Shown here one piece after another: positions 722 through 62,165 of a DNA stretch of 64,000 nt; position 1 is the first letter of the stretch; every line of letters starts with the position of its first letter. The translations under genes and the position numbers were made by a program. This DNA is from Macrostomum lignano (taxonomy: Eukaryota): the NCBI GenBank assembly GCA_002269645.1, contig NIVC01000152.1, positions 901,176-965,175 on the forward strand. Reading direction: 5' to 3'. The notes under the pieces were generated by a model. The model did not search any database and was not told the DNA's origin. It saw nothing but the letters and a program-made list of their open reading frames with translations.

Positions 722-1650
722 TGCTCAACATGCAAGTATTAAAGATTTATTAGTAAGTGTGGTAAACACCAATGAAATTAATATTATGCCATGGTCTATT
801 GACTATATAAATGAAATGGGAAAAAGTTAATTAATGTACTAGGTACATAATATTGCTTATCAATTAAAGGTAAGCATTGCTAGCTCTATTTTAAATCAAA
901 GTAAAGTAACCCAAAGCATTATATATTATATTGTATATAAAAAACAAAAGATTATATATAGAGTCCCAATGAGCCTAGCTTTTTCAAGTCAAGGTCAAGT
1001 CAGTAGTGCAGCTAGGGGGGGGGGGTAGGGGCCTAGGGCTCTTCAAAATTCTAGAAAAAATTACTCCCCCCTGAAATTCTAGAAAACCCCCCTTTATACC
1101 TTTTGTTCCAAGTGCTAAATAGGTACCCACCCCTCAAAAATTTCTAGCAATGCCACTAGCTCAAGTTGAATAGTATGAATATCTGCCTAAATAAAATTAA
1201 AGGCACCTTACTTTTGAAAATTGTTCAAGTATTGTAACAGAAAAGTTACAAAACTTTTTGTACTTTATATTTAATATTTTTTATTGCATTTTGCCTATGA
1301 GGCACTGTGATGAGACCTGGTTTTACTTAAAATTTCTATGTCCAATATGTCATTTTAGCTTTTTTATTAATTATTTATTGATAAAAATATTTAACATAGA
1401 CATTATAGCCAAAACCTTTGCAACAATGCCTATGAAACTTCATCTTAGGCCTAAAGCATATAAGGACCTAAAAATCTTATTAATATTATTTCTAGGGCCT
1501 AGTATATTTCTCAAAACTATACTATATTTATCCTATAAATAGGGTCATAAATAAATCATATTATATATTATAAAGTTCTATTATAACCAAAGGGCCTATC
1601 AACTTAAGCTCAAAGTTGAGCCTAAGTAACATGTATACACAAATGATATG

Positions 1651-1890
1651 TCATTCTGCTTGTTGTGACACTTGGAAGCTGGGTTTGGCAAAAGCGATAA
1701 AAAACCAGACTTGAAATAGGGGAGAAAATTATCAATATTTAGGAATAGTTGATGATTAATGACTATTATATTGACTTTAGCTCATAGTAGAGTCCCTAAT
1801 TATTTCCTTAGTTATTATCCCACATTCCAAGTCCAATTTTATCGCTTTTTTGCCAAACCCAGCTTTTTCGTGTCATTATGAGCAGAATGA
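1651..1890. mobile_element. MITE with ~70-bp imperfect terminal inverted repeats (TIRs)
   Basis: TCATTCTGC..AAGCTGGGTTTGGCAAAAGCGATAAAA at the left end is mirrored by TTTTATCGCTTTTTTGCCAAACCCAGCTT..GCAGAATGA at the right end. Confidence 0.75.
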
Positions 1891-2215
1891 TATCGTATAT
1901 AGCCATATCTCAATTTTTTATTATAGGCCTAGCTATCTATCTATATCCATTCCATATCCATAGCTTATAAACTCCCTATAAATTCTTACAACTTTCTTGC
2001 AAGAGTCAAGAAAAATAAGTAGAATTCTTAATATAGGTGTAGGACCAAGACTGCCATATACCAATACCATCATACTTAGGGGAGCAGGAGCTAAGCGAGA
2101 AATTTGGCTCAATGTGATTATTAGATGGTGCTAATGAGAAGATGAATGGGTAGGAGAGCTAGCAAGACAAGGCTGCGAGAAAAGAACCTATGAGAGGATT
2201 AGCAATGCTAAAAGA

Positions 2216-4246: not shown

Positions 4247-4406
4247 AAAGATTGGTAGCTCCCCCGCAATACCTACCAGTAGCTAGTAATAGCTAAGGTG
4301 TTCTTAGTGTATGGCAGTCTTAGTCATGCACCTAATAATGGTTTCTAGTTGTAATTGTTTTATGCCATAAATAAATACTGAAAATTGAAACCCTACTGGT
4401 ACTAGG

Positions 4407-8168: not shown

Positions 8169-10169
8169 GACTGGTGATGTGACTGAGTTTACTAGTGATG
8201 TGACCGCATAGACTGGTGAGGTGACCATGTTGACTGGTGATGTGACCCTGTTGACTGGTGATGTAACCGTGGTTACTGGTGTTTTGACCAAGTTGACTTG
8301 TGATGTGACCGTATTGACTGGTGATGTGACCATATTGACTGGTGATGTGACCGTATTGACTGGTGATGTGACCGAGGTGACTGGTGATGTGACCACATTG
8401 AATGGTGATGTGACTGCATTGACTGGTGATGTATGTGACCACATTGACTGGTGATGTGACCGTATTGACTGTTGATGTGACAGAGGTTATTGGTGATGTG
8501 ACCACGTTGACTGGGTGATGTGACCATATTGACTGGTGATGTGACAACGTTGACTGGTGATGTGACCGGATTGACTGGTGATGTGACCATATTGACTGGT
8601 GATGTGACCACATTGAATGGCGATGTGACTGCATTGACTGGTGATGTATGTGACCACATTGACTGGTGATGTGACCGTATTGACTGTTGATGTGACAGAG
8701 GTTATTGGTGATGTGACCACGTTGACTGGGTGATGTGACCATATTGACTGGTGATGTGACCGAGGTGACTGGTGATGTGACAACGTTGACTGGTGATGTG
8801 ACCCGATTGACTGGTGATGTGACCACATTGACTGGTGGTATGACAATGTTGACTGGTGATGTGACAGATGTGACTGGTGATGTGACCATGTTGACTGGTG
8901 ATGTGACTGTATTGACTGGTGACGTGATTGAGGTGACTGGTGATGTAACTGCGGTGACTGGTGTTTTGACCACGTTGACTGTTGTGACCACGTTGACTGG
9001 TGGTGTGACCGGATTGACTGGTGATGTGACCGTATTGACTGGTGATGTGACCGAGGTGACTGGTGATGTGACCACATTGACTGGTAATGTGACCACATTG
9101 ACTGGTGATGTGACCGAGGTGACTGGTGATGTGACCACATTGACTGGTGATGTGACCGCGGTGACTGGTGATGTGACCACGTTGAATGGTGATGTGACTG
9201 CGTTGACTGGTGTTGTGACCACGTTGACTGGTGATGTGACCCCGACGACTGTTGATGTGACCGTATTGACTGGTGATGTGACCGAGTTGACTAGTGATGT
9301 GACCACGTTTACTGGTGATGTGACCGTATTGACTGGTGATGTGACCGAGGTGACTGGTGATGTGACCACATTGAATGGTGATGTGACTGCATTGACTGGT
9401 GATGTATGTGACCACATTGACTGGTGATGTGACCGTATTGACTGTTGATGTGACAGAGGTTATTGGTGATGTGACCACGTTGACTGGGTGATGTGACCAT
9501 ATTGACTGGTGATGTGACCGAGGTGACTGGTGATGTGACAACGTTGACTGGTGATGTGACCGGATTGACTGGTGATGTGACCACATTGACTGGTGGTATG
9601 ACAATGTTGACTGGTGATGTGACAGATGTGACTGGTGATGTGACCACGTTGACTGGTGATGTGACCGTATTGACTGGTGACGTGACCGAGGTGACTGGTG
9701 ATGTGACTGCGGTGACTGGTGTTTTGACCACGTTGACTGTTGTTGTGACCACGTTGACTGGTGGTGTGACCGTATTGACTGGTGATGTGACCGGATTGAC
9801 TGGTGATGTGACCGGATTGACTGGTGATGTGACCGTATTGACTGGTGATGTGACCGAGGTGACTGGTGATGTGACCAAATTGACTGGTGATGTGACCACA
9901 TTGACTGGTGATGTGACCGAGGTGACTGGTGATGTGACCACATTGACTGGTGATGTGACCGCGGTGACTGGTGATGTGACCACGTTGACTGGTGATGTGA
10001 CCCCGACGACTGTTAATGTGACCACGTTGACTGGTGATGTGACCGAGTTGACTGGTGATGTGACCGAGTTGACTGGTGATGTGACCACGTTTACTGGTGA
10101 TGTGACCGTATTGACTGGTGATGTGACCGAGGTGACTGGTGATATGACCCGACGACTGGTGATGTGACC
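8169..10169. repeat. 21-bp minisatellite (consensus GTGACCACGTTGACTGGTGAT), ~95 units, with higher-order duplicated blocks
   Basis: Direct inspection. It accounts for all the TGDVTxL, SPVNxVT and HHQS ORFs in the track. Confidence 0.97.
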
Positions 10170-11676: not shown

Positions 11677-13125
11677 ATTAATATAACAATAGCTATTAAG
11701 TTGCTAATTAATTGTAAAAAGATAGTGGATATAATAGAGATTCAATGTTGTGTGGCCATCTTAGTCTTATACCCTTTTTTAATAGGGATCATATAATAAA
11801 AGAATACAATAAAGAAAATTATTTAACAAAAAGAGAGCAGTTCAAAATGTTTTTGAAAAAAGCTTGTACGAGCCTAAGCTCGTAGGGCCTAAGCAAATTA
11901 GCAGAATGATCACAATGCCTAATAGGCAAAGTGTATCATAAAGTATTGAAAATATAAATACAAACAGTTTTATATAATACAAGCTCATAATAAGTCCAAT
12001 ATATTAAATATTTACTTAGCAAGAGACAAGTGCACTACTATTAGTAACATAATAATTTAGCAACTACGCCTGTCAGTCCAAAATGATTTACTATAGTATA
12101 AGAAATTGTGTTGTCTTATTATGAATGTGTATACTAATGATTGACTTTGATTTATCAGTGTGCTATGGTTTTCAAATGCTAAATTGATTGATCTATGTCT
12201 AAGGCTGCCACATGCTTATAGAAAAGACTAGAACTTACATGTTTAAATATGAGTCACATTTCTTAGAAATGGAAACCAATTAAACAAAATACCTATTATT
12301 AGAACCTTATAATAAACTACACATAATTATTATAGCTAAGGATCTTGACTAAAGTTAGAATAAATAAACTAGATTCAAATTACAGAATAGTTACAATACC
12401 TTTTTTATTACATGACAAATTTTTAAGACTAAGGTATCTTTTTAGGCAAGTGAGATTCATCAAATAAAATAAAAATACCAAAATAGCTTTTAAAATCCCA
12501 AATTTAAGCCAGGCCTAATAATTTTTTTACTAGAGGCCAATGCTTAGTCACTAGTAGCAAGTTGATTTGCTAAAAATCAATTTGCTGAAAGTAGGTTTTT
12601 TTGTTGAAAGTTTTATCTTGACTTCTAACTCATCTTATATATAAATATGATGGACCTTATATAATGGTATATTCAGTATTGTAAAATAGAAAATTAAATA
12701 AATAAATGAACAAGGTCCAGCTATGACAGGTTGACATCTAGCACTAGCTGCATTGTCCATAGAATGTTTATAGTCCAGCAGCGGCATCTGCTTGATATTG
12801 CCTTTGCAGTTGGCTATGAGTATGTCAATTATGCAATAATATGTCTACTATAAAAGCCGCAACATATTGGCTAAGGCAATGATAGTGTGTTGTGCTTGTC
12901 ATCATCATGATCATGTTAATAGAAGCCTTTTGGCAGATGGTGATGCTCTAGTCAAATGAGTTTTGCAAATTTTCCAAAAAGAAAGTAAAAAAGTAATTAA
13001 AAAATTGTTGCTTTTGTAGTAATAGTAATAGATAATATACTAATAAAGTATTTTTAGTCAACCATTATAATCTTCTGTCTTCTTTTTATGGTTCTTTCTA
13101 CCCACAATCATTGGGCTTTAATTTA

Positions 13126-16100
13126 ATGACTATGAAGAAATCAAATAAATTTCCTGAGAAAAATACTGAAGAAGAGGAAATGCTGCTGCAAAATTATGCA
13201 TTGTTAAAGAAATTGGTAAGTTAAATGGATTGTTTCTTTGGCCTAAAATTGTCTTTCCTTAAGCTGAGCTTCTATTCTAGCAGATCTCCAAGTTAAGACC
13301 CTACTCTACCACATCTCCAGGTTGAGACCCTACTCCACCACATCTCCAGGTTGAGACCCTACTCTACCACATCTCCAGGTTGAGACCCTACTCTACCATA
13401 TCTCCAAGTTGAGACCCTACTCTACCACATCTCCAAGTTGAGACCCTACTCTACCACATCTCCAAGTTGAGACCCTACTCTACCATATCTCCAAGTTGAG
13501 ACCTTACTCTACCACATCTCCAAGTTGAGACCCTACTCTACCACATCTCCAGGTTGAGACCCTACTCTACCACATCTCCAAGTTGAGACCCTACTCTACC
13601 ATATCTCCAAGTTGAGACCTTACTCTACCACATCTCCAAGTTGAGACCCTACTCTACCATATCTCCAAGTTGAGACCCTACTCTACCACATCTCCAAGTT
13701 GAGACCCTACTCTACCACATCTCCAAGTTGAGACCCTACTCTACCATATCTCCAAGTTGAGACCTTACTCTACCAAATCTCCAAGTTGAGACCCTACTCT
13801 ACCACATCTCCAGGTTGAGACCCTACTCTACCACATCTCCAAGTTGAGACCCTACTTTACCATATCTCCAAGTTGAGACCTTACTCTACCAGTCTACCAG
13901 ATCTCCAAGTAAGGACCCTACTTTACCAGATCTCCAAGTTGAGACCCTACTCTACCATATCTCCAAGTTGAGACCATACTCTACCCGATCTCCAAGTAAG
14001 GACCCTACTCTACTATCTGCTCTGCTTTAGGATCAATTCACCGGGTCAAGGTTAACCTTAGATCTACAAAATTATATATTTTAACTGTGCCTGTCAATCG
14101 CCGCAGAGAAAACAGCTGACTGAGCTGCGCAGCCGGCAAGCGGCCGAGGCCGAGACAAATCGCGAGAAGGAGGAAACGCCGGTTAAGCCTAACGAAGATG
14201 CCAGGGTGGCGGCTGAGCGCCTGGTGAAACTGGGCAAAATTAAAATACAAAGCGCCTGCCCGCCTCGGGTATTGATGAAGAAAGGCCGCGATTCGACTGG
14301 CCCAGTCTCCGCTTATCGGCCCTACTCGCCTACTGGCGGCGGCTCTGACGAGATTCAACAGCATCAGAATCAGCTGCAGCAGCCGCCAGCCAAGCGGCCG
14401 CGCTCGAATCTCTACGACAGCTTCGTTTCTGGCGGCGTACAGGATCCGGCGCCAGCTACCCCGTCAGGGAACAGCGCCGAGCCCAATAAGCCCCGTGGCA
14501 ACACTCTATTCGTGCAGGGCTACAATATCCATCCAGATATGCTCCGGTCGGCGTTCAGCCCGTTCGGCCCGATCTCGCGCATCGCTATGGAGAATCGCGC
14601 TGGCGGCCTCGCCGGCCGGTTTGGCGACTCCAAAGCCAACAACAAGCCGAAGGCGTTTGTCACGTTCGAATCGGAAGACGACGCCGCTAACGCTATGGAT
14701 CAGGTGTGCTACTTAATATTTTTATTAATTAGCTGGTAGATAGATAGATAAAAAGACGCTATAGAGTCAAAAACCTTAGCGCTCACACGCTCGCGAAAAA
14801 GCTCAGAAAGGCAGGAAGTGGGCTCAAGTGTGGTGAGGTAGATGGCTTGAAGGTCACTAGCAAAGTTCTTTAGAAGCGTCTCAGTGCGCGCATGTCCGCG
14901 ACGGTATGGGTCGCATAGACATGCATGCGCAACCTCCAAAATTCGGTCGGCCATGCGACTTAGTTTTAACAAAAATGCGACGTAGTTTTTGGCCAAAAAT
15001 GCGACTTACATGTAAAAAAACCTAAAGCAAAATTAATGCAACATTGGGTAAACAGCAGGAGTAACTATGACTGTCTTATTAAGCCAAAATGCCTCGTCAG
15101 CTACTTAGTACTACTACTGGGTAATTTTTTGGGTGGGTATTTTTGCGACTTCCTTGGTTGGCCACCAAATCGGCCAACTCGGCCGACTGTTGCGCATGTA
15201 TGCGCATAGCGGATTGAGCACGACAACCGCAAGGGGGTTCATTTCCCCTCGAACGTAGCTGCGTAGCACATTGCCGCGAAGTCGCCGCGCTCTCAGGAGG
15301 GAGCTCACTGGTGGGACGCCGGAGCGAGCAGCGAGCGCACGGTTTGACAGCCTTTCAGGGTAGCGGAGATCGAGAGCAAACCGCAGCAAAGCTCTGAAGG
15401 TGGCGTCGAGAGCCTGGTTGCGAGATTCCGTGACCGGCAGAGCTTCGAGACCGTAAAGGAATATCGGCAGCACGACAGCACAGAAAATCCGGATTTTAAG
15501 TTGGTCAAATTAGCTGATAGTAGTTGTTAATAGTCATAGTGTTTGGTAATATTTATTTAAGTTCTTAATGTTGGATTTTTATGCAAAAACGGTCGCGAAG
15601 TTTTTACAATTGTTTTTTTATTGATTCTGTTAATTTTTGCACTGTTAAGCACAGATCAAAACATAAAATTTCACTTAACTTCGAATTGGAATTGGAATTG
15701 GAACTCTGTTGACTAAGCAGTTTACGTATTGTATTTGCGTTGTTTGTTTTTGCTGAAACATTTGCTTAATATTATCTGCTTTCTACTGTAAGTAGGTGGA
15801 ATCGCTTATTAGCGACTTAGTAATTAAAAATTAGTTTCGTGCCTTATGGCTGGGGTGGCCTAGGGGGTAGCGGGTGGCGCGGCCGGCGGTCCAGGGGCAA
15901 AGAGGGGTTGGTAAGAGTTCGGAGGCGGGGCGGGCCGCTCTAGTCTACGCGAGGCCTCACACATTCCTTATTTGGTAAGCGGCCGGCGCCGAGAAAATTC
16001 TATTTATGGTCAAAACTAAACCTGAGAGACTTAGAAGTATTGAATAGTTTGGGCTATGCTACCAACTATGGCTTAGTCGGTACGGGCGGCAAGATTATGA

Positions 16101-20503: not shown

Positions 20504-21531
20504 TCAGTTGGCGCCACGGTCGCCCTGGCGGCAGAGCTCCAGCATGCACTCCTCCGAAGCCTCATCGATGCCGCTAGCCTGCAGCTCCTTGAAGATGCCC
20601 TGCAGTTTGTTCTTCAACTCAACCTTGGACGAGGCGATCAGCATCTTCTGTCTGATTGGGATGCCGTCGGGACCCCTGGACACAGTGGAAATCAATTAAT
20701 GCATTGTATTTTTAGATTCTAGAAGAAAGATCCCAATTATTGGGTTGAAGCGGGTTAGACTTCGGTCGAGAGTTTTCCCTCACTAGAAATCTCAGATCAT
20801 TGTGGATCCCACCAACTGATGCCTATCAATGGGGATCCCACCAACTGATGCCTATCAATGGGGATCCCACCAACTGATGCCTATCATTGGGGAATCCCAA
20901 CAACTGATGCCTATCATTGGGAATCCTAACAACTGATGCCTATCATTGGGAATCCCAACAACTGATGCCTATCATTGGGGAATCCTAACAACTGATGCCT
21001 ATTATTGGGAATCCCAACAACTGATGCCTATCATTGGGAATCCTAACAACTGATGCCTATTATTGGGGAATCCCAACAACTGATACTTATTATTAGGGAA
21101 TCTCAACAACTGATGCCTATCATTGGGGATCCCACCAACTGATGCCTATCATTAGGAATCCCAACAACTGATGCCTATTATTGGGGAATCCCAACAACTG
21201 ATGCCTATCATTGGGGATCCCATCAACACACAGTTAAAAAGGCAAAACAACTAACCAAGACACAAAAAACGAGCCGGCTGCGCTTTTGCTTGGACTCTTC
21301 AAATTCGAAGACCAAGTCATAAACGGCATAGCAGCCAACTTTCCTGTTCACCGAGTCCTTCAGATCTTCTATGAATTCATTGTAGGTGGCGTCAGCTGGG
21401 GCCTTTTTCAAAACGCCAATCTCCTTGTCATTATTGACAAAGCCAAACAGCAGATACCTGTAGCAGTGGTTGGTCTTGATCTCCTGGAAGGTGTCAAGCA
21501 CCTCCTGCTGAACTTTCACTCCGGAAGCCAT
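20504..21531 (-). CDS. cofilin: ADF/cofilin (exons 21531-21256 and 20675-20504; one extra base in T6 run 21264-21269; possible upstream ATG-only exon 21806-21804)
   Basis: MASGVKV..YRYLLF..YAVYDL..RLVF(VS)W|GPDGIPIRQKMLIASSK..LKNKLQGI..ELQA is the ADF-H pattern. The phase-2 intron lies in the Trp codon. Exon sum is 448 nt, one base too long. Confidence 0.93.
20801..21222. repeat. 29-30-bp minisatellite (TGGGGATCCCAACAACTGATGCCTATCAT) in the cofilin intron
   Basis: Direct inspection, ~14 units. Confidence 0.95.
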
Positions 21532-21545
21532 GCAATAAATTGGGT
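21529..21545 (-). promoter_or_regulatory. Spliced-leader-like sequence ACCCAATTTATTGCATG at the cofilin start
   Basis: 14/14 (16/17) match to the 3' end of the Macrostomum lignano SL as I recall it (..AGACTCAATTTATTGCATG). Branch-point-like CTAAC lies immediately upstream. Confidence 0.65.
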
Positions 21546-25282: not shown

Positions 25283-25948
25283 GCAATCCTTCAGTTTCCC
25301 GCTCTAAATTATCAAAGAGCTTGCGTGCACGGCAGCCGTTCACGTAAGCTCAGAATTGCGTGCACGGCGGCTATCTACCTAGTGCTTTATTTGCATGTAT
25401 GCAGCCGTCCACCTAGTGTTGTGATTGCGTGCACGGCAGCCGGCAATTGGCCGGGACTGGGGCCCTTAAATCCATGCATTGGCATTGGCAAACCTAATTA
25501 AAAAATATTTTTACTATATTGTTTTATAATGTTTTATTCCCCGTACACCATGGACGGACTGCAAATGTAATCTTAATTCATTGTTATTTTTGTTAACTTG
25601 AATATTAATTCGAATAGTATATGACTTACTATATAAGCCTATAAGATATAGCTCTGCCGTGCACGCAATTCTGAGCTTACGTGAACGGCGGCCGTGCACG
25701 CAAGCTCTTCGCTAAATTATTTAAACCCCTTTTTGAACATTCAGAGTCTGACTAGCTCACAGAGTTCTTGCAAGAGTTAAAAGAGTTCTACATAGGGTAG
25801 TAGTGTGTTATCCAGTAGAGGATATTGCCAAAGTGCTGATGGGGGAAAGCTCGGCAAATGGTTGACCATCAGATGGTTGGCCAACGTGTTGTAGGTGGCC
25901 TATTGGTCCAGGGTTTAAATAATTTAGAGCGGGAAACCAAAGGATCGC
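25283..25948. mobile_element. MITE with ~38-bp TIRs; the left TIR is split by a second element
   Basis: The right end reverse-complements to GCGATCCTTTGGTTTCCCGCTCTAAATTATTTAAACCC, which is reconstituted on the left after removing 25313-25720. Confidence 0.75.
25313..25711. mobile_element. Mutator-like MITE, 399 bp
   Basis: ~55-bp TIRs (AGAGCTTGCGTGCACGGC..CGTTCACGTAAGCTCAGAATTGCGTGCACGGC); exact 9-bp TSD CTAAATTAT (25304-25312, 25712-25720). Confidence 0.88.
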
Positions 25949-30250: not shown

Positions 30251-30893
30251 TATATGTAAACATATAATGTGTTAATATAAGAATGTTATAATTTGTTACC
30301 ATTAATTTTATCTTCCTAAAGTATAAGACTTTTCTCACGCGATTTAAAAAAATATTTTTTGTCACTAGTCTAATAAAGCAAACAGTTTCTAGAAAAAATA
30401 TTTGGCCATTTCAACCAGTTAAAAACCTGATAGAAGTTAATTTGTCCTACAATCATTTGTCTAGGTCACAGTCAAATCAAAGCAAATAAACAAATCCAGA
30501 CACTTACTGAAAAGTAGGAAAGTTTGTCAAATTTGTCATATTATTTGTCATTTTCTTCAACCACACACAACTGTCTTGAAATTTTTTATTAAGCATCAAA
30601 AAAGTCCTTCAATTTGTCTCAGATTATGGTAGCTGCTATAGTGATGCTTCTCTTTAAAAATTGCTTTCTATTATCTATAGTAAAAAGATCAATTTATAGC
30701 TGGTAGTTAGCTAAAGCCTAAAAATCTGTTAAGATCTTTTGTTAATTCTTCACAATGTATCTTTAACTCATCTAGATTATTTACGTGTTCCTATCTGCAC
30801 ATATTGAGTTTAAAGGCATTATGCCCCATTTTTAATTCATGCCATCTCCCATGTAAGCCTGCACGCCTCCAACTTCAGTGACCTTTCTGAACG

Positions 30894-33150: not shown

Positions 33151-33473
33151 GGCAGATTCCGGGAGTTTTTGGGATATGATTGCTTTCACAAGCTCAAGAT
33201 TTCACATCATCGGAAAAGTATTGTTGATCACTCTACGCTCGTAAAACAATGCGGAAACATCATAAGATCGAAGTTTTACATCGTCCAATAATCTTGCTTG
33301 TTAACTTCACTGGAGCGAAACTTTTACAAGCTCAAGCACATCGTCGAAATCGTGAGATCGAAATCGTTAAAAGTTGTGAGATAGCGGAAATTACTCTAAC
33401 AAGACTTTGAAGGTGTGAAATTTCGAGCCTGTGTATAAGCGTCAGAATACTCATACGAAAGTTCTTTTAATTC

Positions 33474-39092
<5,619 letters not shown>

Positions 39093-42156: not shown

Positions 42157-42569
42157 AAAGAAAGACATATAGATTTCAAAGAAAGACATCTAGATTTCAA
42201 AGAAAGACATCTAGATTTCAAAGAAAGACATCTAGATTTCAAAGAAAGACATCTAGATTTCAATGAAAGACATCTAGATTTCAAAGAAAGACATCTAGAT
42301 TTCAAAGAAAGACATCTAGATTTCAAAGAAAGACATCTAGATTTCAATGAAAGACATCTAGATTTCAAAGAAAGACATCTAGATTTCAAAGAAAGACATC
42401 TAGATTTCAAAGAAAGACATCTAGATTTCAATGAAAGACATCTAGATTTCAAAGATAGACATCTAGATTTCAAAGAAAGACATCTAGATTTCAAAGACAG
42501 ACATCTATATTTCAAAGAAAGACATCTATAGATTTCAAAGAAAGACATCTAGATTTCAAAGACAGACAT
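42157..42569. repeat. 21-bp minisatellite (AGATTTCAAAGAAAGACATCT)
   Basis: Direct inspection; it explains the SLKSRCL ORF. Confidence 0.97.
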
Positions 42570-42829
42570 TTCCCCATCCGTTCCCCATCTCACTCTCGTC
42601 CCAATCTCGTCCCGCAGCGAAGTTTTCCTACGATGGTTTTGCATGTGCCTTTTTAACGCCCCTGAATCCATGGACCGCTTTTATTTTTTCTGCCTCCTGC
42701 TAGAGAGAATCATAAAATGAGAATGTGACTAAAACAATCTGTGTCCCTGTTGGGAAGGCAACACAAAATTAGTAACTTTTTTTAAATAAAACTACATGTA
42801 GCTTTTCAACTTGTACATGTACAGTCACT

Positions 42830-43640: not shown

Positions 43641-45191
43641 CTTTATATTATCTTTGTCTTTTACACCTCAGCTCAGCAATTTCCCTATGAGCTTTGACAT
43701 CTTAGTAATAATTCCCCCATGACTCTTTTATGGTTGATATATGACAACCATATATGACAACCATGGTTGACATGGCGATTCTTTTATGGGCCTAAATTTT
43801 CGAATCCCTTGTGTGCAAACTGCCAAATATTGACAGCAAAACCTCTGTGTGCACAGATAGTACGAATACATGTATAACGTATAAGTTATACATGTACGAG
43901 TAAAACACACAAGGACGTACTATTCTAGTATGTCCTTGTGTGTGCGGGCACACGGGCTGGAAACCTGCGCCTGTGAGAAAATCTCGTGCTCCTGAATTTG
44001 ATTGCAGCATATCTTAATGGGCCTTTGGTGTAGAAGAGTAGACTTTCAAACATAGTATCATCATAAATGTAGTTTATTTGGCACCGCTTTTATGCTGAAT
44101 GTCTGACTAAAAATTCTACGTTTTGATTACCTAGCTGTGGCTTAGAAGTTGGATTGAAGATAAGTAGCTATATGAAACTGTACGTTCTCCAGATACTCGA
44201 AACTCTGAGTATCTATAGCTACATGTGAATATCTACAAGTAATTAAATGTAGCTCAGCTCGATCAGCATCCATGATCGTGGCTCAGTGCAAGTCAAATGT
44301 TACTAAGTTTAAGACGTTTAGCTAAAAGTTAAAATAAATACATAGTATATATTCACTTCAGTTATGGTAAGTTATAAAAATTTTGATCTAGAAATAATGT
44401 AGGTCACTATCTTAAATCTAAATTGTGAGATTTTCTGGAAGAATTTTTTATTCGTGATGCCCACGAATCTGCAATCGCACGGTTTTAACATTAGCGAAAT
44501 CTTATATTTTTGACAAATGTAATTTGCTTGCGTGCTTGCAATTGCTTGCTTTGTTAGTAGCTAGATTTTTATTTATAATGATATGAAAAATGTCAAATTT
44601 TCTTTTTCATGTATCTTGGCTGTTTTGTTTTTGTCCTATAATCTATTCAGTATGGTTGCATATTTCTGTCACTAATAACAATAAGCCAAAATAAGTTTAT
44701 AAGTATAGGTTTTTAGTTGTAGCTATAATAAAATACTATTTAAGAACCTATTAAAAATTCTATTCTTCATTAATATTATCATTTTTAAGCTTACTTTCGA
44801 GCCTTTATACTAATTTTAATAGTAACAATTTTACTATATATATTATACAATATTCCCATATTGGCACAATACAAATATATAGCTTAGGTTATATATATCA
44901 GTCTAATCATTAGACTAATGTATAATATAGATAGTTTAGACAACAATAAATAACAAAAATACTAATAATTATAATAAAGTTTCTGGGCCAAGTAAGTACA
45001 TATTAGCTAAGTATCTGAATCTAGGAAAATAGCATTTAATATAAAATATGAGGCTTTATTAAATGTGTTAATCTTTTGAATATTATAGCTAAGTACATGG
45101 CTAGGCCTTCTTAGTTTAAAAGTTTGCTTTAGTATTAAATAATCTTGCATTCCTGACAGCCAAACAGTCACCTAATGGTTCAGTTGCAGAG

Positions 45192-48342: not shown

Positions 48343-48470
48343 GTTGCACAATGCACATTAGTTATATCGGCAATGTGGGCACTAGTATTATTTTTAACCT
48401 TATAATATTTGGTTTGTAAAATTTGATAGTATTGGCTTATGATGTTTATTGATTGTAAAGTTTAGGTTTT

Positions 48471-49148
48471 GTGAAGCTTAGGTATTGTGAAGCTTTGGGA
48501 TTATGAAGCTTAGGAGTTGTGAAGCTTAAGGGTTGTGAAGCTTGGGGATTGTGAAGCTTGGGAATTGTGAAGCTTAAGGGTTGTGAAGCTTGGGATTGTA
48601 AAGCTTGAGGATTGTTAAGCTTGAGGATTGTGAAGCTTGAGGATTGTTAAGCTTGAGGATTGTAAAGCTTGAGGATTGTAAAGCTTGAGGATTGTTAAGC
48701 TTGAGGATTGTAAAGCTTGAGGATTGTTAAGCTTGAGGATTGTGAAGCTTGAGGATTGTTAAGCTTGAGGATTGTAAAGCTTGAGGATTGTAAAGCTTGA
48801 GGATTGTAAAGCTTGAGGATTGTAAAGCTTGAGGATTGTAAAGCTTGAGGATTGTTAAGCTTGAGGATTGTGAAGCTTGAGGATTGTTAAGCTTGAGGAT
48901 TGTAAAGCTTAAGGATTGTAAAGCTTGAGGATTGTAAAGCTTGAGGATTGTGAAGCTTGAGGATTGTAAAGCTTGAGGATTGTAAAGCTTGAGGATTGTA
49001 AAGCTTGAGGATTGTGAAGCTTGAGGATTGTTAAGCTTGAGGATTGTAAAGCTTGAGGATTGTGAAGCTTGAGGATTGTAAAGCTTGAGGATTGTAAAGC
49101 TTGAGGATTGTAAAGCTTGAGGATTGTAAAGCTTGAGGGTTGTGAAGC
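48471..49148. repeat. 16-bp minisatellite (AAGCTTGAGGATTGT[A/G/T])
   Basis: Direct inspection. Confidence 0.97.
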
Positions 49149-49894: not shown

Positions 49895-51020
49895 TGTTCC
49901 CTCACCCCCTTGATTTTTCCTTCCCTCACCCCCTGTTCTTTCCTTCCCTCACCCTCTGTTCTTTCCTTCCCTCACCCTCTGTTCTTTCCTTCCCTCACCC
50001 CCTGTTCTTTGCTTCCCCACCCCTATTCTTTCCTTCCCCACCCCCTGTTCTTTCCTTCCCTCACCCTCTGTTCTTTCCTTCCCTCACCCTCTGTTCTTTC
50101 CTTCCCTCACCCCCTGTTCTTTGCTTCCCCCACCCCTATTCTTTCCTTCCCACCCCCTGTTCTTTCCTTCCCTCACCCCTGTTCTTTCCTTCCCTCACCC
50201 CCTGTTCTTTGCTTCCCCCACCCCTATTCTTTCCTTCCCCACCCCCTGTTCTTTCCTTCCCCACCCCTAGTCTTTCCTTCCCCACCCCCTGTTCTTTCCT
50301 TCCCCCACCCCTAGTCTTTCCTTCGCTCACCCCTGTTCTTTCCTTCCCTCACCCCTATTCTTTCCTTCCCCACCCCTGTTCTTTCCTTCCCCACCCCTAG
50401 TCTTTCCTTCGCTCACCCCCTGTTCTTTCCTTCCCCCACCCCTAGTCTTTCCTTCCCTCACCCCTTTTCTTTCCTTCCCTCACCCCTGTTCTTTCCTTCC
50501 CTCACCCTCTGTTCTTTCCTTCCCTCACCCCTGTTCTTTCCTTCCCTCACCTTCTATTCTTTCCTTCCCCACCCCCTGTTCTTTCCTTCCCCACCCCTGT
50601 TCTTTCCTTCCCCCACCCCTAGTCTTTCCTTCGCTCACCCCCTGTTCTTTCCTTCCCCACCCCTAGTCTTTCCTTCCCTCACCCCTTTTCTTTCCTTCCC
50701 TCACCCCTGTTCTTTCCTTCCCTCACCTTCTATTCTTTCCTTCCCCCACCCCCTGTTCTTTCCTTCCCTCACCCTCTGTTCTTTCCTTCCCTCACCCTCT
50801 GTTCTTTCCTTCTCTCACCCTCTGTTCTTTCCTTCCCTCACCCCCCTGTTCTTTCCTTCCCTCACCCTCTGTTCTTTCCTTCCCTCACCCCCCTGTTCTT
50901 TCCTTCCCTCACCCTCTGTTCTTTCCTTCCCTCACCCCCCTGTTCTTTCCTTCCCTCACCCTCTGTTCTTTCCTTCCCTCACCCTCTGTTCTTTCCTTCC
51001 CCCACCACCTATTCTTTCCT
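49895..51020. repeat. ~23-bp polypyrimidine minisatellite (TTCTTTCCTTCCCTCACCCCCTG)
   Basis: Direct inspection. Confidence 0.96.
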
Positions 51021-51269
51021 GCCCTCGTCCTCTCCCCCATTTTTTCCTTCCTTCGCTCTCCACCTCTCTTCCTACTCATACGAGTATATCCCCCCTATCT
51101 TCTTTTACTCAACTCTCTCCTCTCATCCTGTACTTTTCAATCTATTCGTTTCTCCCCACTCTGTCTCCGCTAATCTCGCCTTATAATTTCATATTTTTGA
51201 ATAATCTCGTCATAAATTCAGTGATGTACATTTGTGTTGGTTCTGTATTGTTTGAGTCCAATTTAAAAC

Positions 51270-51682: not shown

Positions 51683-52315
51683 GCTGCCTCAGTGTGAAAT
51701 TTTTCTGAGTACGGACTCTGGCAGAGACGGAGATGCAGCAGCACAGTCCAGATTTCTGCTTCTGGCTAGGTGTAACTCTTATTCTTTAGCCCTCTCCATT
51801 TTTTGTATTTAATCCGGTCATGCTTTGGTCATCATCAACAATGAGCTTTGTTTCTTACGGTACATACATGTCTTAATATACTTATTGAGCAGGAGTCCTC
51901 CATTTAACTCTGTGGCTTTACATCTAAAATGCCTTCTTCTCATTATAGTCATTATTCTTGTCAAATCTATTTCGGCTTGAACAAGGTATTCTGTTGTCTT
52001 TTTTTATTTCCCTCTATTCATTTCGTTCGATGCTTTTGAACTGACTTCCAATATAAGATTTTTAATTTCCTACTTTTGATTGATGCACTTTTGCTTTTAA
52101 ACCAAATGATTATGTGCTCGCTTGGTGTACCTTGTAGAGTTGCGCAATCGGATATGAAATAAATGCGCACTTTTGCACTTTTGAGGGCATTAGCTGCTTA
52201 ACTGTTGAGTGCATCCCTGACTCTTGGACTGAGCAGGGTCTTTCTTCCTTCTGACAACTAATCTTACTCGAAAACTGTACGATTTCTCTTGCTTTGCTTT
52301 TTAATTTTTATAAAA

Positions 52316-53762
52316 TCCCTGATTACTGATCCCTGATCCCTTATCAGTGATCCCTGGTCTCTAATCACTGATCCCTGATCCCTGATCACTGATCCCTGGT
52401 CTCTAATCACTGATCACTGATCCCTGATTCCTAATCACTGATCCCTGGTCTCTAATCACTGATCCCTGGTCTCTAATCACTGATCCCTGGTCCCTGATCC
52501 CTGATCCCTGATTCCTGGTCTCTGATCACTGATCCCTGATTCCTAATCACTGATCCCTGGTCTCTAATCACTGATCCCTGATCCCTTATCAGTGATCCCT
52601 GGTCTCTAATCACTGATCCCTGATCCCTGATCACTGATCCCTGGTCTCTGATCACTGATCCCTGATCCCTAATCACTGATCCCTGGTCTCTAATCACTGA
52701 TCCCTGATCACTGATCCCTGATCACTGATCCCTGATCACTGATCACTGATCCCTGGTCTCTGATCACTGATCCCTGGTCTCTGGTCACTGATCCCTGGTC
52801 TCTAATCACTGATCCCTGATCCCTAATCACTGATCCCTGGTCTCTAATCACTGATCCCTCATCACTGATCCCTGGTCACTGATCACTGATCCCTGGTCCC
52901 TGATCACTGGTCCCTGATCACTGATCCCTGATTCCTGGTCTCTTATCACTGATCACTGATCCCTGGTCACTGATCACTGATCCCTGATCACTGATCCCTG
53001 ATCACTGATCCCTGATCACTGATCCCTGATTCCTGGTCTCTTATCACTGATCACTGATCCCTGGTCACTGATCACTGATCCCTGGTCCCTGATCCCTGGT
53101 CCCTGATCACTGGTCCCTGATCACTGATCCCTGATCACTGATCCCTGGTCTCTGGTCACTGATCCCTGGTCTCTAATCACTGATCCCTGATCCCTAATCA
53201 CTGATCCCTGGTCTCTAATCACTGATCCCTGATCACTGATCCCTGGTCACTGATCACTGATCCCTGGTCCCTGATCACTGGTCCCTGATCACTGATCCCT
53301 GATTCCTGGTCTCTTATCACTGATCACTGATCCCTGGTCACTGATCACTGATCCCTGATCACTGATCCCTGATTCCTGGTCTCTTATCACTGATCACTGA
53401 TCCCTGGTCACTGATCACTGATCCCTGGTCCCTGATCCCTGGTCCCTGATCACTGGTCCCTGATCACTGATCCCTGATTCCTGGTCTCTTATCACTGATC
53501 ACTGATCCCTGGTCACTGATCACTGATCCCTGGTCCCAGATCACTGGTCCCTGATCACTGATCCTTGATTCCTGGTCCCTGATCACTGATCCCTGGTCAC
53601 TGATCTCTGATCCCTGGTCTCTGATCACTGATCCCTGATCCCTGATCACTGATCCCTGGTCTCTGATCACTGATCCCTAGTCCCTGATCACTGGTCCCTG
53701 ATCACTGATCCCTGATTCCTGGTCCCTGATCACTGATCACTGACCCCTGATCCCAGATCACT
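52316..53762. repeat. Complex 7-bp-unit repeat (GATCCCT, GATCACT, GGTCTCT, GGTCCCT, AATCACT variants)
   Basis: Direct inspection. Confidence 0.97.
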
Positions 53763-59553: not shown

Positions 59554-59774
59554 GTGTCAGGACATCGGCCAGGCTGAAAAACAAATAATGCGTAATTTAA
59601 CAATTATAATTGCTTTTTATTTTTAATGGCTCTGCTTCATTTTTCTAAATTGAATACAAAAATAATACTAAAAAACTTTATGAGACTTTAAAGACGGAGA
59701 TCACCAGAGAATCATAATTAAAATAAACATCTAGGTGATTAAAAAGAAATAAAAAGGGCATCCAAAAATAATCG

Positions 59775-59960
59775 ACATTTTCAAATAATCGAAAATCATG
59801 AATATCTTGTAGTTATGACTATGTCCTTAACTCACAACTGAACTGAACCCACGCAGTAAAGAGTAAATAAGAGTTCGAAGAAAATCGGTTGAGCAGTTTT
59901 TTCTCTAATCGATCACTATCACATAGATACCGACAAACCATTTTAGTATATTAGACTATG
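59775..59960 (+). mobile_element. Possible Helentron-associated (HINE/DINE-like) element 3' fragment
   Basis: GAAAATCGGTTGAGCAGTTT ... GACAAAC ... TTTTAGTATATTAGA resembles the conserved 3' part of such elements. Confidence 0.4.
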
Positions 59961-62165
59961 TAAATGTTTAATGCACCAAAGCTGCGAAAAAATCATACTG
60001 AGTTCTAAAGAGCTATTTATGAGTTTGTGGAGTGTTATTAAAAATTAGCTATGGCTATTCGACGCAAACATTGCCGGTTGCCGATTTAAAATTAAAAATT
60101 AGATTTAAAAAATTTAGTTTACAAACGTTGAAATTTGTACCAACGCTTTATTTTATCTCTTCAGAAAACTTTAAGAAAAGTTTTACAACGTATTTAACGC
60201 ATTTTATTAAGTTTAATGAAACAAATTAGTGAAGAACTTATAGTATGATAATTAGCTAGGCAGATTTGTTTTTCTAATATATAGATTGCTTTGATCAGTA
60301 TGCACCGCGAATTTAAGTTTTATTTATTTCAGAATTATCGTGCAGCAACGCTTCCGGCACGGCACAGTGTGTATTAATATCGTGCATGCGCAATTTTTTT
60401 CTTATTATTATTAACTGGGGCTTATTACAACGTTGTGGAACATGTTTTCATTGCTCACGCTCAAACGACTTCAAATATCCATACTGTCAATATGCTGTGT
60501 AATTCTATATTACTACCATCTCTTTAGGCCTATTCAAATTGTCACGTGACTCCAGAAGCACCAATTAACGATTAAGGGGCGTGTCTTACCGTCTATTGTA
60601 ATAAATGTATTGCAATAAATGTATTACATATTTTGTACTGTAGCTTGTAACAAGTCTTTTCAATTTAACAAGCTAGACCTAATACGAATTGCATAGTTGA
60701 ATTGTGATGTTGATGTAAATGACAATGAATCATAGACATATATAGGCTACTCATAAATAATGGACTAGGCCTATGGCTATATAATCTTAGACCTAGGGCA
60801 GTATCTTTTGCCTAATTATATTTTCTGTAGTATAGGCTTTATTAACCATTTAATATTATGAATATCAAATATTAATAAAAATAAAACAATTCAGTTGCAA
60901 AGAAAATTAGGGATTTAGGTCTAGATATTTTTTAGATATATTTTCCATAGACTGTAGCTATATATTTAGCCTAGATATATCTATATATGCTACAAAAAGT
61001 GTATAAATGCATTAGTCTTAAATCTTTTAGATTGTCATAGATATAGTCCTACTATACTATATAGCATGTTTAAATTAAATGTTTGTTAAATATATGTCTT
61101 ATATTTATATATTTAATAATTTAAATGCCAATTATTCTAAATGTCAAATGTGTGAGCCTTTTAAAATTTCTTCTAATATATATACTTATACTTTATAGCT
61201 GTATTGTAATGATCTTATATATATAAAATAATTAAACTTAATTCTATTGATGATAAACATAAGTTGCTATTTGATAAAGATAATTATAATAGTTTTTTGT
61301 CTAATAGCAACTTATATGCATATATGTCAATAGAAATAGATATAAGTAAATCTCAAAGTTTTATATATTTATTATAATACTAAGCTTGACCAATTTTCTA
61401 AGGCTTTAACAGCTAGTAGCCTATGGAAAATAAGTTTTTAATTAGGAATATTACTAAGAATAAGATTGAAAAATTGAAAAAACTACTTTGGAAAAAGTAT
61501 AGTCTATTTTAATAAAAAAATTGTTTTAAATATTTTTTAAGCAAATTCGTTATCTTTTATTTAATTTATAATAGTTTTCTTTAAAATGTTTAAAATTATT
61601 AAGCCAATTGAAAACATTTGTTCTAATTTGCTAAAAATTAGAATTCTTAATGCTTTTATTATTTTTAATGACTTATAATGATAAGCTTTTATTCATTATC
61701 AAACTTACATTTGATCATTTAGATAATAAAATGAAGAGTAGATAACATTGCTTAGCACTAGGTAAAGCAAGTACTAAAATTGTTATTATTAGAAATACTT
61801 ATTGGCTTCTTAGTGGTTAATTAAATTTCAAGTTCCTATAAATGTGTTTAAAGCTAAAACAGATTAAGCTTTTTCTCAAATATCCTTGTTGCCAATCTTC
61901 CCAATCATTTTAATGTGATTTTGTCCTTTAGTACTCTGTTTCCAAATGCCATTTGTTGTCTTCAATGTATTCATTGTCTTCCTTGTCTTTAATGTTGACT
62001 ATTAGAAAACCCAGATAACAATAGTCTTAGCATTTGTTTCTTTACCTTGCATGTGCCAAGAGCACCCTAGGTTGTTAGTGAGGAGAGAGAAGTGTGAGCG
62101 TGAGTGCAGTGAGCGATATTTAAAACGGTCAGGGGAAAGACAAGAAAGTAAAACACCTTGAAAGA

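What the first reader, a model, noticed from the sequence alone, without database searches (positions are those of the whole stretch)
729..62053. Recurrent pyrimidine tract + (TTG/ATT)CATG at gene 5' ends instead of a YCAG acceptor
Seen: five gene starts have CATG after a T-rich tract where a trans-splice acceptor would sit. They are NKIRAS (TTAATACTTGCATG), cofilin (CAATTTATTGCATG), RPL17 (TTTTAATTCATG), the 33.5-kb gene (TTCTTTTAATTCATG) and CNBP (TTTCTTTACCTTGCATG). Deleting the T gives a canonical CAG acceptor in every case. The internal cis-splice acceptors I mapped, and the upstream acceptors of ZNF106 and SLC9B, keep normal AG. By eye I found only about three other TTGCATG heptamers in the window. 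Inference: this is a systematic acceptor-to-SL-end conversion restricted to 5' sites. It could be a real SL-templated genome-editing/gene-conversion process or a polishing signature, and either would give a DNA-only map of trans-spliced genes.
Basis: partly seen in the sequence, partly recalled or inferred. Interest (0 to 1): 0.75.

Follow-up and report, generated by a model that had tools for sequence, protein, structure and literature searches.

The report
Spliced-leader tail polished into assembly
The "CATG instead of CAG" at gene 5' ends is the last few bases of the flatworm Macrostomum lignano spliced leader (…TTGCATG), most likely written into this reference assembly when it was polished with RNA-seq reads; this makes it an assembly artefact that marks trans-splice sites, not genome editing.

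Summary
The window is the last 64 kb of contig NIVC01000152.1 of the Macrostomum lignano Mlig_3_7 assembly. All five quoted strings are present. The M. lignano spliced leader (SL) ends in …CAATTTATTGCATG. The cofilin site equals its last 14 nt, the NKIRAS and CNBP sites its last 7, and the RPL17 and "33.5-kb gene" sites only its last 4 (CATG).

- "Pyrimidine tract + CATG" is common in the window, and CATG is not enriched at 5' ends (P=0.06).
- TTGCATG is not enriched window-wide, but 3 of its 6 copies sit just upstream of start codons, in sense (P=1.6e-5).
- "Deleting the T gives CAG" holds for any CATG, so it is not evidence.
- The two cofilin copies differ at 3 of the last 14 outron bases, and each difference makes the window copy identical to the SL.
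- The assembly paper says Mlig_3_7 was polished with Pilon using Illumina DNA reads and STAR-mapped RNA-seq.

Best explanation (confidence about 0.8): SL-bearing reads overwrote the true …YAG acceptors. Raw DNA reads could not be checked. The RPL17 and 33.5-kb sites may be chance.

The parts
21529..21542 (-). CAATTTATTGCATG, identical to the last 14 nt of the M. lignano spliced leader. It abuts the first exon base of cofilin (GCTTCC…, 21528 downward). Its ATG serves as the apparent start codon (MASGVKV…).
   Evidence: - Searches give the string and coordinates; one search gives the SL sequence.
- the paralogue's annotated coding sequence is 5'-partial and starts at GCT, directly after CATG.
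- The paralogue reads CTATTTGCTGCATG. All 3 differences make the window copy identical to the SL.
729..742 (-). TTAATACTTGCATG upstream of NKIRAS. The last 7 nt (735 to 729) equal the SL tail TTGCATG. The real NKIRAS ATG is at 721-719, 7 nt downstream.
   Evidence: -.
- The gene has canonical GT-AG introns, so it is not a processed retrocopy.
- No RNA or annotation evidence for the junction was obtainable.
62037..62053 (+). TTTCTTTACCTTGCATG upstream of CNBP. The last 7 nt equal the SL tail, and the pyrimidine tract before them is strong (13 of 16). The CNBP ATG is at 62166.
   Evidence: -.
- GC content steps from 0.33 to 0.50 across the site.
- The junction itself was not verified.
13070..13090 (+). 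A sixth site, not in the finding: ATCTTCTGTCTTCTTTTTATG. This is a pyrimidine tract followed by TATG, where TAG or CAG would be expected. It sits 2 nt before the annotated 5'-partial coding sequence of an RRM protein (13093-18789, 393 aa, starts with Ser and has no Met).
   Evidence: -.
- A 5'-partial coding sequence whose first full codon is at 13093 fits a transcript 5' end at 13091, the base right after the ATG (inference).
- 5' ends in this annotation were set from SL-containing reads.
30830..30841 (+). TTTTAATTCATG, 52 nt upstream of the RPL17 ATG (30894). Only CATG matches the SL. Its status as a junction is uncertain.
   Evidence: -: identical in all three assembly copies.
- the same 12-mer recurs at 33465.
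- GC content steps from 0.31 to 0.55 across the site.
30873..30878 (+). An intact canonical CTTCAG| acceptor, 15 nt before the RPL17 ATG. It could be an alternative junction, or it may be unused. A TOP-like CCTTTCT follows it.
   Evidence: read directly from the sequence.
33462..33476 (+). TTCTTTTAATTCATG, 622 nt upstream of the annotated coding-sequence start (34099) of the long '33.5-kb' gene (772-aa product). Only CATG matches the SL. Its status as a junction is uncertain.
   Evidence: -.
- identical in three copies.
- A chance CATG with this much pyrimidine context is expected in about 620 nt.
45184..45189 (+). Control: an unaltered TTGCAG| acceptor 2 nt before the SLC9B-like ATG (45192). 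It shows what a TTGCATG site would look like with a plain AG.
59574..59581 (-). Control: an unaltered TTTTTCAG| acceptor 20 nt before the ZNF106-like ATG (59553).
25391..25397 (+). Background TTGCATG in the intergenic region between cofilin and RPL17. It is not at a recognised gene 5' end.
34511..34517 (+). Background TTGCATG at the 3' end of the first coding ORF of the 33.5-kb gene (TTGCATG|GTGCAA). This is a donor-like context, not an acceptor.
42639..42645 (+). Background or unassigned TTGCATG (GGTTTTGCATG|TGCC), 2.5 kb upstream of SLC9B. It was not examined further.

Best explanation
The window comes from the Macrostomum lignano reference assembly Mlig_3_7. In this flatworm, about 30-39% of genes receive a 35-nt spliced leader (SL) ending in …CAATTTATTGCATG.

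**Proposed mechanism**
1. The assembly was polished with Pilon using both genomic Illumina reads and STAR-mapped RNA-seq reads. This is stated in the paper.
2. RNA-seq reads that start inside the SL carry a few SL bases joined to exon 1. If the SL part is not clipped, it is laid over the end of the outron as mismatches or a 1-nt insertion (inferred).
3. Where RNA depth or alignment weight exceeds that of the DNA reads, Pilon 'corrects' the outron's last bases to the SL tail (inferred).
4. The true …YAG| acceptor then reads …[C/T]ATG| in the assembly. The SL-identical tract runs back from the junction for a variable length. Tracts seen here are 14, 7, 7 and 3 nt, plus 6 nt in the cofilin paralogue.
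5. Internal cis acceptors are spared because reads spanning them are spliced correctly. Weakly expressed trans-spliced genes (SLC9B, ZNF106) are also spared.

**Consequence for cofilin.** The real DNA probably has no ATG. The SL donates the initiator AUG, as is known for flatworms.

**Shown:** the organism and assembly; the SL identity of the strings; their position at annotated SL-defined 5' ends for two genes; the SL-directed differences between paralogues; the RNA-seq polishing step.

**Inferred:** that the DNA itself carries AG, and the exact aligner and Pilon behaviour.

The RPL17 and 33.5-kb sites share only CATG with the SL. They may be the same artefact with a short tract, or chance.
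For: - **Source.** The RPL17 protein look-up places the window on GCA_002269645.1, contig NIVC01000152.1, with 100% identity to locus L003.
- **SL sequence.** The published SL is CGGTCTCTTACTGCGAAGACTCAATTTATTGCATG, and the normal trans-acceptor motif is [T/C]TNCAG. That motif was reported at only 9,551 of 21,754 mapped trans-splice sites.
[quoted passage not shown] The same paper ran STAR with --alignEndsType EndToEnd for its transcriptome mapping.
- **SL match lengths.** The cofilin site is an exact 14-nt SL suffix; a suffix of 13 nt or more occurred about 0.01 times per simulated window.
- **Position.** Three of six TTGCATG copies lie in sense within 150 nt of start codons (P=1.6e-5).
- **Annotation.** The cofilin paralogue protein P0001 is annotated 'partial' and starts ASGVKV…, with its coding sequence beginning at the base after CATG. 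The RRM coding sequence is also 5'-partial and begins 2 nt after TTTTTATG. 5' ends in this annotation were cut at peaks of SL-containing reads.
- **Paralogue comparison.** The window reads CCCAATTTATTGCATG and L004 reads CCCTATTTGCTGCATG. These are 3 differences in 14 nt, all towards the SL, against 2 differences in the next 136 nt upstream.
- **Not retrocopies.** NKIRAS, cofilin and the RRM gene keep GT-AG introns.
- **No other SL source.** The 5' 22 nt of the SL are absent from the window at up to 3 mismatches, so there is no SL RNA gene or full relic.
- **Tract length.** The longest tract seen is 14 nt.
- **Splicing chemistry.** Established knowledge of U2-type splicing says an AG is needed at the 3' splice site. 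A mapped junction preceded by TG therefore points to an error in the assembly.
Against: - No raw DNA reads, no independent M. lignano assembly (ML2) and no DNA-only-polished Macrostomum genome could be reached with these tools. The key prediction, AG in the DNA, is untested.
- The polishing-run parameters for STAR are not stated. With default soft-clipping the SL tail would mostly be clipped, so the exact route to the miscorrection is inferred.
- RPL17 should be among the most highly expressed genes. It shows only a 4-nt match, and it keeps an intact CTTCAG| closer to its ATG.
- The RPL17 and 33.5-kb sites share an exact 12-mer, of which 8 nt are not from the SL.
- Clusters of 3 or more substitutions per 14 nt are not very rare between the two copies: about 10 in roughly 6 kb of colinear alignment.
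- PMC8629364 reports that the sequence earlier taken for the SL RNA (described from ML2) maps to the 5' end of a protein-coding gene in Mlig_3_7. How ML2 was polished could not be checked. If that locus already carried the SL in ML2, SL sequence in DNA would not be explained by the Mlig_3_7 polishing alone.
Confidence: 0.8

Rival explanations
1. The SL tail is really present in the germline DNA. SL-bearing cDNAs would have been copied back into the genome by retroposition or 5' gene conversion, as with the relict spliced leaders of dinoflagellate retrogenes. These genes would then truly carry part of the SL upstream of exon 1.
For: - The strings equal the SL 3' end and sit exactly at exon 1.
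- PMC8629364 reports that the sequence earlier taken for the SL RNA maps to the 5' end of a protein-coding gene in Mlig_3_7.
- Dinoflagellates show that SL relics in DNA do exist (PMC6050394, PMC5585692).
Against: - NKIRAS, cofilin and the RRM gene retain introns close to the junction.
- The tracts are short (3-14 nt), always contiguous with the junction, and differ in length between near-identical paralogues.
- The 5' 22 nt of the SL are absent from the window, and no poly(A) remnant was seen at the two 3' ends inspected (RPL17, CNBP).
- A cDNA end that is not homologous to the outron is a poor conversion substrate (inference).
- The genes are still annotated as trans-spliced at that very base, which would need an AG that a real CATG lacks.
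- A documented RNA-seq polishing step explains the same pattern more simply.
Confidence: 0.06
2. Some or all sites are chance or ordinary promoter sequence. CATG after an AT/T-rich stretch would simply be common in AT-rich upstream DNA, or would reflect an initiator-like CA+1 start site, unrelated to the SL.
For: - 155 of 366 stranded CATGs have a pyrimidine-rich 16 nt upstream.
- CATG is not significantly enriched near start codons (P=0.06).
- TTGCATG is not enriched window-wide.
- The RPL17 and 33.5-kb sites match the SL for only 4 nt. The 33.5-kb site is 622 nt from the coding sequence, and RPL17 has an intact CTTCAG| nearer its ATG.
Against: - The 14-nt exact SL match at cofilin, and three of six TTGCATG copies sitting in sense just upstream of start codons (P=1.6e-5), are not chance.
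- Annotated 5'-partial coding sequences begin right after the ATG in two genes.
- As an account of only the two ATTCATG sites, chance remains quite possible; I put it at roughly 40-50% for each.
Confidence: 0.1
3. The DNA really reads CATG, and M. lignano trans-splices at a non-AG (TG) 3' splice site at these genes.
For: The assembly lacks AG at two junctions that the annotation treats as SL sites. YTNCAG was reported at only 44% of mapped trans-splice sites.
Against: - U2-type 3' splice sites almost always end in AG (established knowledge).
- Other trans-acceptors in the same window (SLC9B, ZNF106) and all cis acceptors read here are AG.
- The non-AG bases are exactly the SL's own last bases, which an RNA-read artefact predicts and a novel splice signal does not.
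Confidence: 0.02

Closest known systems
Consensus-polishing miscorrection from RNA-seq reads (Pilon fed STAR alignments), as documented in the Mlig_3_7 assembly procedure (PMC5730564)
   Same: - The bases that depart from a normal acceptor are exactly those that SL-bearing reads would carry.
- The tract is contiguous from the junction and variable in length.
- It is bounded at about the length an end-to-end alignment tolerates.
- It is confined to trans-splice sites; internal acceptors are intact.
   Different: I found no paper describing this specific artefact (SL tail written over acceptors). The aligner settings of the polishing run are not published, so the exact route is inferred.
Relict spliced leaders at the 5' ends of dinoflagellate retrogenes ('mRNA recycling'; PMC6050394, PMC5585692)
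   Same: SL-derived sequence lies in genomic sequence immediately upstream of the gene body.
   Different: As I recall, dinoflagellate relics are long or near-complete DinoSL copies on intron-poor retrocopies, often stacked in tandem. Here the tracts are 3-14 nt, the genes keep their introns, and near-identical paralogues differ in tract length.
Flatworm SL 3'-terminal AUG used as initiator methionine (Cheng et al. 2006, J Biol Chem, cited in PMC9851317)
   Same: For cofilin, the reading frame MASGV… begins with the ATG that belongs to the SL tail. The paralogue's annotated coding sequence has no Met of its own.
   Different: That phenomenon concerns the mRNA. Its appearance in the genome sequence here is what is abnormal.
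Canonical M. lignano trans-splice acceptor [T/C]TNCAG (PMC8629364)
   Same: - An upstream pyrimidine tract.
- A position just before exon 1.
- A GC-content step across the site.
- SLC9B shows the unaltered form TTGCAG|.
   Different: In the assembly, the AG is replaced by TG at the affected sites.

Membership tests
RNA-seq polishing artefact (SL tail over acceptor) | The assembly was polished with reads that carry the SL | tested here: met
   The window is part of GCA_002269645.1, Mlig_3_7. The Methods state Pilon polishing with Illumina DNA reads and STAR-mapped RNA-seq.
RNA-seq polishing artefact (SL tail over acceptor) | The aberrant bases equal the SL 3' end and are contiguous from the junction | tested here: met
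   SL suffix matches are 14 nt (cofilin), 7 (NKIRAS), 7 (CNBP), 4 (RPL17), 4 (33.5-kb gene), 3 (RRM) and 6 (cofilin paralogue).
RNA-seq polishing artefact (SL tail over acceptor) | The site coincides with a mapped SL junction | tested here: inconclusive
   Supported indirectly for cofilin and the RRM gene, where 5'-partial coding sequences start right after the ATG. There are no RNA data for NKIRAS, CNBP, RPL17 or the 33.5-kb gene.
RNA-seq polishing artefact (SL tail over acceptor) | Raw genomic reads or an independent DNA-only assembly show YAG at the site | not testable with these tools
   Only Mlig_3_7 contigs were returned for the M. lignano proteins looked up. The Wasik 2015 paper is not held.
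RNA-seq polishing artefact (SL tail over acceptor) | Cis acceptors and weakly expressed trans-acceptors are unaffected | tested here: met
   The NKIRAS and cofilin cis acceptors are AG. The SLC9B and ZNF106 upstream acceptors are AG. Expression levels themselves were not measured.
Relict SL from retroposition (dinoflagellate type) | The gene body is a processed copy without introns | tested here: not met
   GT-AG introns are present in NKIRAS, cofilin and the RRM gene (a donor follows the first coding exon; the coding sequence spans 5.7 kb for 393 aa).
Relict SL from retroposition (dinoflagellate type) | A long or complete SL copy is present | tested here: not met
   The longest match is 14 of 35 nt. 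The 5' 22 nt of the SL are absent at up to 3 mismatches.
SL RNA gene | The full 35-nt SL is followed by a GTAAG donor and an Sm site | tested here: not met
   There is no full SL in the window. The SL-like strings are followed by exon sequence, not a donor.
Canonical SL trans-splice acceptor | An AG dinucleotide lies immediately before the first exon base | tested here: not met
   In the assembly, TG precedes the exon at the cofilin and RRM junctions. AG is present at SLC9B and ZNF106.
Core-promoter initiator (Inr-like CA+1) | The motif is enriched at transcription start sites, independently of the SL | tested here: inconclusive
   CATG is not significantly enriched upstream of start codons. 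No transcription-start data are available.

The most novel reading that the evidence does not exclude
The germline DNA of M. lignano really carries the last 3-14 nt of its spliced leader in place of the AG at many trans-splice acceptors. The two possible mechanisms are SL-cDNA-templated conversion of the outron end, and AG-independent trans-splicing. Either would make trans-spliced genes recognisable from DNA alone and would supply a DNA-encoded ATG to genes such as cofilin.
Probability: 0.05. Interest if true: 0.85.

Novelty: not a real feature. Interest (0 to 1): 0.15.

Why it matters
As biology it is most likely nothing: the acceptors are probably ordinary YAG sites. As a data-quality issue it matters to users of a widely used reference genome.

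If the explanation is right, a sizeable share of trans-splice acceptors in Mlig_3_7 is miswritten. In this window that would be 4 to 6 of 8 gene 5' ends. The consequences would be:
- false genomic ATG start codons, as at cofilin;
- lost AG acceptors;
- biased acceptor-motif statistics (the published YTNCAG motif was found at only 44% of mapped sites);
- possible errors in promoter or 5'-UTR constructs and guide designs copied from the assembly.

It is also a general warning against polishing assemblies of SL-trans-splicing organisms with untrimmed RNA-seq reads. Conversely, in this one assembly the SL-tail strings can be used as a rough DNA-only pointer to strongly expressed trans-spliced genes.

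Tried and rejected
1. **Processed retrogene with an SL relic.** Rejected: introns are present and the 5' 22 nt of the SL are absent from the window.
2. **SL RNA gene in the window.** None found.
3. **Second SL variant ending …TTTTAATTCATG**, to explain the shared 12-mer. I found no support in the papers read; they describe a single, conserved SL. The idea was not excluded.
4. **Poly(A)-tail overwriting at 3' ends**, a companion artefact one might expect. No A-runs were seen after RPL17 or CNBP. Uninformative.
5. **Paralogue comparison at the RPL17 and 33.5-kb sites.** All three copies are identical, so this is uninformative.
6. **A systematic scan for ATG-versus-AG differences between paralogues over 20-35 kb.** It found only two TATG/TAAG differences, in intergenic DNA (22339, 25159), indistinguishable from ordinary SNPs.
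7. **Fetching paralogues or orthologues of the NKIRAS, CNBP and RRM junctions.**
   - The homologue searches returned no M. lignano proteins for NKIRAS or CNBP.
   - The CNBP ORF is not on record.
   - The paralogous locus L006 does not reach the RRM gene.
8. **Independent read-level evidence through Logan or other assemblies.** Only Mlig_3_7 contigs carry these proteins.
9. **Wasik et al. 2015**, for how ML2 was built. The paper is not held.


Full report
**1. Where the window comes from**

The RPL17 ORF (30894-31451) is encoded, residue for residue, on three contigs of GCA_002269645.1. Locus L003, from NIVC01000152.1, is identical to the window over all 6,558 bases compared. The window is therefore the last 64 kb (record 901176-965175) of a 965-kb contig of the Macrostomum lignano Mlig_3_7 assembly. 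Two other contigs, NIVC01001154.1 and NIVC01004482.1, carry near-identical paralogous copies. This fits the known duplicated genome of the DV1 line.

**2. The observation**

All five quoted strings are present at the stated places. TTGCATG occurs six times on the two strands, three at the cited sites and three elsewhere.

- Of 366 stranded CATGs, 155 have at least 9 of 16 pyrimidines upstream.
- CATG is not significantly enriched in the 150 nt upstream of the eight recognisable start codons (7 against 3.4 expected, P=0.06).
- 'Deleting the T gives CAG' is true of every CATG.
- The CATG's ATG is the start codon only in cofilin. In NKIRAS, RPL17 and CNBP the real ATG lies 7, 52 and 112 nt downstream. 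The annotated coding sequence of the '33.5-kb gene' starts 622 nt downstream.

**3. What the strings are**

The published M. lignano spliced leader is CGGTCTCTTACTGCGAAGACTCAATTTATTGCATG, and the normal trans-acceptor motif is [T/C]TNCAG (PMC8629364).

Measured as exact suffixes of the SL ending at the G of ATG:

| Site | Suffix length | Matching string |
|---|---|---|
| cofilin | 14 nt | CAATTTATTGCATG |
| NKIRAS | 7 nt | TTGCATG |
| CNBP | 7 nt | TTGCATG |
| RPL17 | 4 nt | CATG |
| 33.5-kb gene | 4 nt | CATG |

- In first-order Markov simulations of the window, a suffix of 13 nt or more occurred about 0.01 times per simulated window.
- Suffixes of 7 nt or more are, if anything, rarer in the real window than in the simulations (6 against about 14).
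- So the signal is not a window-wide excess of the heptamer. It is the position of the heptamer: 3 of 6 copies lie in sense within 150 nt upstream of a start codon (0.056 expected, P=1.6e-5, a post hoc test).
- The 5' 22 nt of the SL are absent from the window, so it holds no SL RNA gene and no full-length relic.

**4. Are these SL junctions?**

No RNA data could be reached, but the GenBank annotation helps. Its 5' ends were cut at peaks of SL-containing reads by the TBONE pipeline (PMC5730564).

*Cofilin.* The paralogue on NIVC01001154.1 encodes protein P0001, named 'partial'. It starts ASGVKV… with no Met, and its coding sequence begins at the G of GCTTCC, the base right after CATG. So the annotators' transcript begins exactly there, and the initiator AUG is the SL's own. 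Such donation of the AUG is known in flatworms (Cheng et al. 2006, cited in PMC9851317).

*RRM gene.* In the window, the annotated coding sequence of an RRM protein (13093-18789, 393 aa) is also 5'-partial. It starts 2 nt after CTTCTGTCTTCTTTTTATG (ATG at 13088-13090). This is what a transcript beginning at 13091 would give.

*Other sites.* For NKIRAS and CNBP the support is the 7-nt SL suffix, the pyrimidine tract and the jump in GC content across the site. For RPL17 and the 33.5-kb gene I have no evidence of a junction:
- RPL17 keeps an intact CTTCAG| at 30873-30878, 15 nt before its ATG.
- A pyrimidine-preceded CATG somewhere in 620 nt is expected by chance.
- Their shared exact 12-mer TTTTAATTCATG is unexplained. 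With up to 1 mismatch there are 3 matches against 0.99 expected, and 7 of 100 shuffles reach 3.

**5. Paralogue comparison**

Upstream of cofilin, the window reads …TTCTAACCCAATTTATTGCATG|GCTTCC. The paralogue reads …TTCTAACCCTATTTGCTGCATG|GCTTCC.
- The two copies have the same length.
- They differ at three of the last 14 outron bases, and each difference makes the window copy identical to the SL.
- The next 136 nt upstream differ at two positions.
- Clusters of 3 or more substitutions per 14 nt are not very rare between these copies: about 10 in roughly 6 kb of colinear alignment. The weight therefore lies in the position and direction of the changes, not in their density alone.
- The RPL17 and 33.5-kb sites are identical in all three copies, which is uninformative.

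**6. Mechanism**

[quoted passage not shown] 2.5.2b'. For transcriptome mapping the same paper ran STAR with --alignEndsType EndToEnd.

The inferred chain of events is:
1. Reads that begin inside the SL carry k SL bases followed by exon 1.
2. Aligned end to end, those k bases are laid on the end of the outron.
3. All such reads agree with one another, so wherever their weight exceeds that of the DNA reads, the consensus caller replaces the outron's last bases with the SL's.

This predicts:
- **Tract shape.** The tract is identical to the SL and contiguous from the junction. Its length depends on the locus and the copy. Seen: 14, 7, 7 and 3 nt, plus 6 nt in the paralogue.
- **Tract length.** There is an upper bound set by the aligner's mismatch limit. 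The longest tract seen is 14 nt.
- **Cis acceptors.** These stay intact, because reads across them are spliced. Seen.
- **Weakly expressed genes.** Their acceptors also stay intact. SLC9B (TTGCAG|) and ZNF106 (TTTTTCAG|) fit, although I did not measure expression.

The model also agrees with the published statement that YTNCAG was found at only 9,551 of 21,754 mapped trans-splice sites. A U2-type 3' splice site needs AG (established knowledge). A mapped junction preceded by TG in both assembly copies is therefore more likely an assembly error than a new splice signal.

**7. Rivals**

- **Real SL relics from retroposition or cDNA conversion**, as in dinoflagellates (PMC6050394, PMC5585692).
  - Against: the introns retained in NKIRAS, cofilin and the RRM gene.
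  - Against: the short tracts, the absence of the SL 5' half, and the missing AG.
  - Caveat: PMC8629364 reports that the sequence first taken for the SL RNA (described from the earlier ML2 assembly) maps to the 5' end of a protein-coding gene in Mlig_3_7. I could not check how ML2 was built.
- **Chance or an initiator-like promoter element.** This remains a live option for the two ATTCATG sites only.
- **AG-independent trans-splicing.** This is very unlikely.

**8. Limits**

No raw DNA reads, no second M. lignano assembly and no DNA-only-polished Macrostomum genome were reachable.
- Look-ups returned only Mlig_3_7 contigs.
- The three homologue searches yielded no M. lignano NKIRAS or CNBP proteins.
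- The CNBP ORF is not on record.

The central prediction, YAG in the DNA, is therefore untested. My confidence in the artefact is about 0.8 for the cofilin, NKIRAS, CNBP and RRM sites, and about 0.5 for each of the RPL17 and 33.5-kb sites.

**9. Verdict**

It is the tail of the spliced leader written over trans-splice acceptors in an RNA-seq-polished assembly. It is not a biological editing process. It has practical importance for users of Mlig_3_7 and low biological interest.

Noticed in passing
window 21264-21269 (- strand): The window's cofilin copy has a run of six T (CTCGTTTTTTGTG) where the paralogue L004 has five. This shifts the frame before the exon-1 donor (TG|GTTAGT). The window copy is annotated only as an 81-aa protein (P0002, Mlig031117g3), and the paralogue gives the full 147-aa cofilin. 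It is either a residual homopolymer error or a real frameshifted copy.
   Followed up: partly
window 30830-30841 and 33465-33476: The exact 12-mer TTTTAATTCATG occurs upstream of two neighbouring genes (RPL17 and the 33.5-kb gene). Only its last 4 nt match the SL, and the flanks show no further similarity. The coincidence is unexplained.
   Followed up: partly
window 729-763 (- strand): The 35 nt upstream of the NKIRAS site are 20/35 identical to the full SL, in register and without gaps, and include CTTACT. This is the highest such value in the window but only marginally above background (others reach 17-19). CTTACTAAT also looks like a branch point.
   Followed up: partly
window 8169-10169, 13272-14013, 16415-17235, 20796-21227, 28085-28868, 36326-36696, 37004-37633, 39805-41073, 42157-42569, 46424-46928, 47665-48060, 48451-49148, 49897-51026, 52315-53759, 63558-64000: There is a very high density of minisatellite arrays (units of 15-89 nt, up to about 95 copies) and a (GTTA)157 microsatellite, lying in introns and between genes. 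These arrays account for the extreme GC/AT-skew blocks at 8-10 kb and 50-54 kb and for the many overlapping ORFs there. The cofilin intron is almost entirely a 29-nt array.
   Followed up: no
window 63558-64000: The window, and with it the 965,175-bp contig NIVC01000152.1, ends inside an 18-nt tandem array. The contig probably broke at this repeat.
   Followed up: no
L004 from about 6090 (about 2.09 kb downstream of the cofilin junction), absent from the window: The paralogous contig loses colinearity with the window at this point over several kb. The extra sequence appears to include a CCHC zinc-knuckle-like coding stretch, judged by eye, so it may be a retroelement insertion in one copy.
   Followed up: no
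window 34511-34517: A TTGCATG lies at the end of the first coding ORF of the 33.5-kb gene and is followed by GTGCAA. This mimics the SL exon/donor arrangement (TTGCATG|GTAAG in the SL RNA gene). It is probably a coincidental cis donor.
   Followed up: no
window 22339 and 25159 (+ strand): At two intergenic positions the window has TATG and the paralogue L006 has TAAG (…CTTATATG / …CTTATAAG and …TTATTATG / …TTATTAAG). They could be ordinary A/T SNPs or further acceptor overwrites at unannotated junctions.
   Followed up: no
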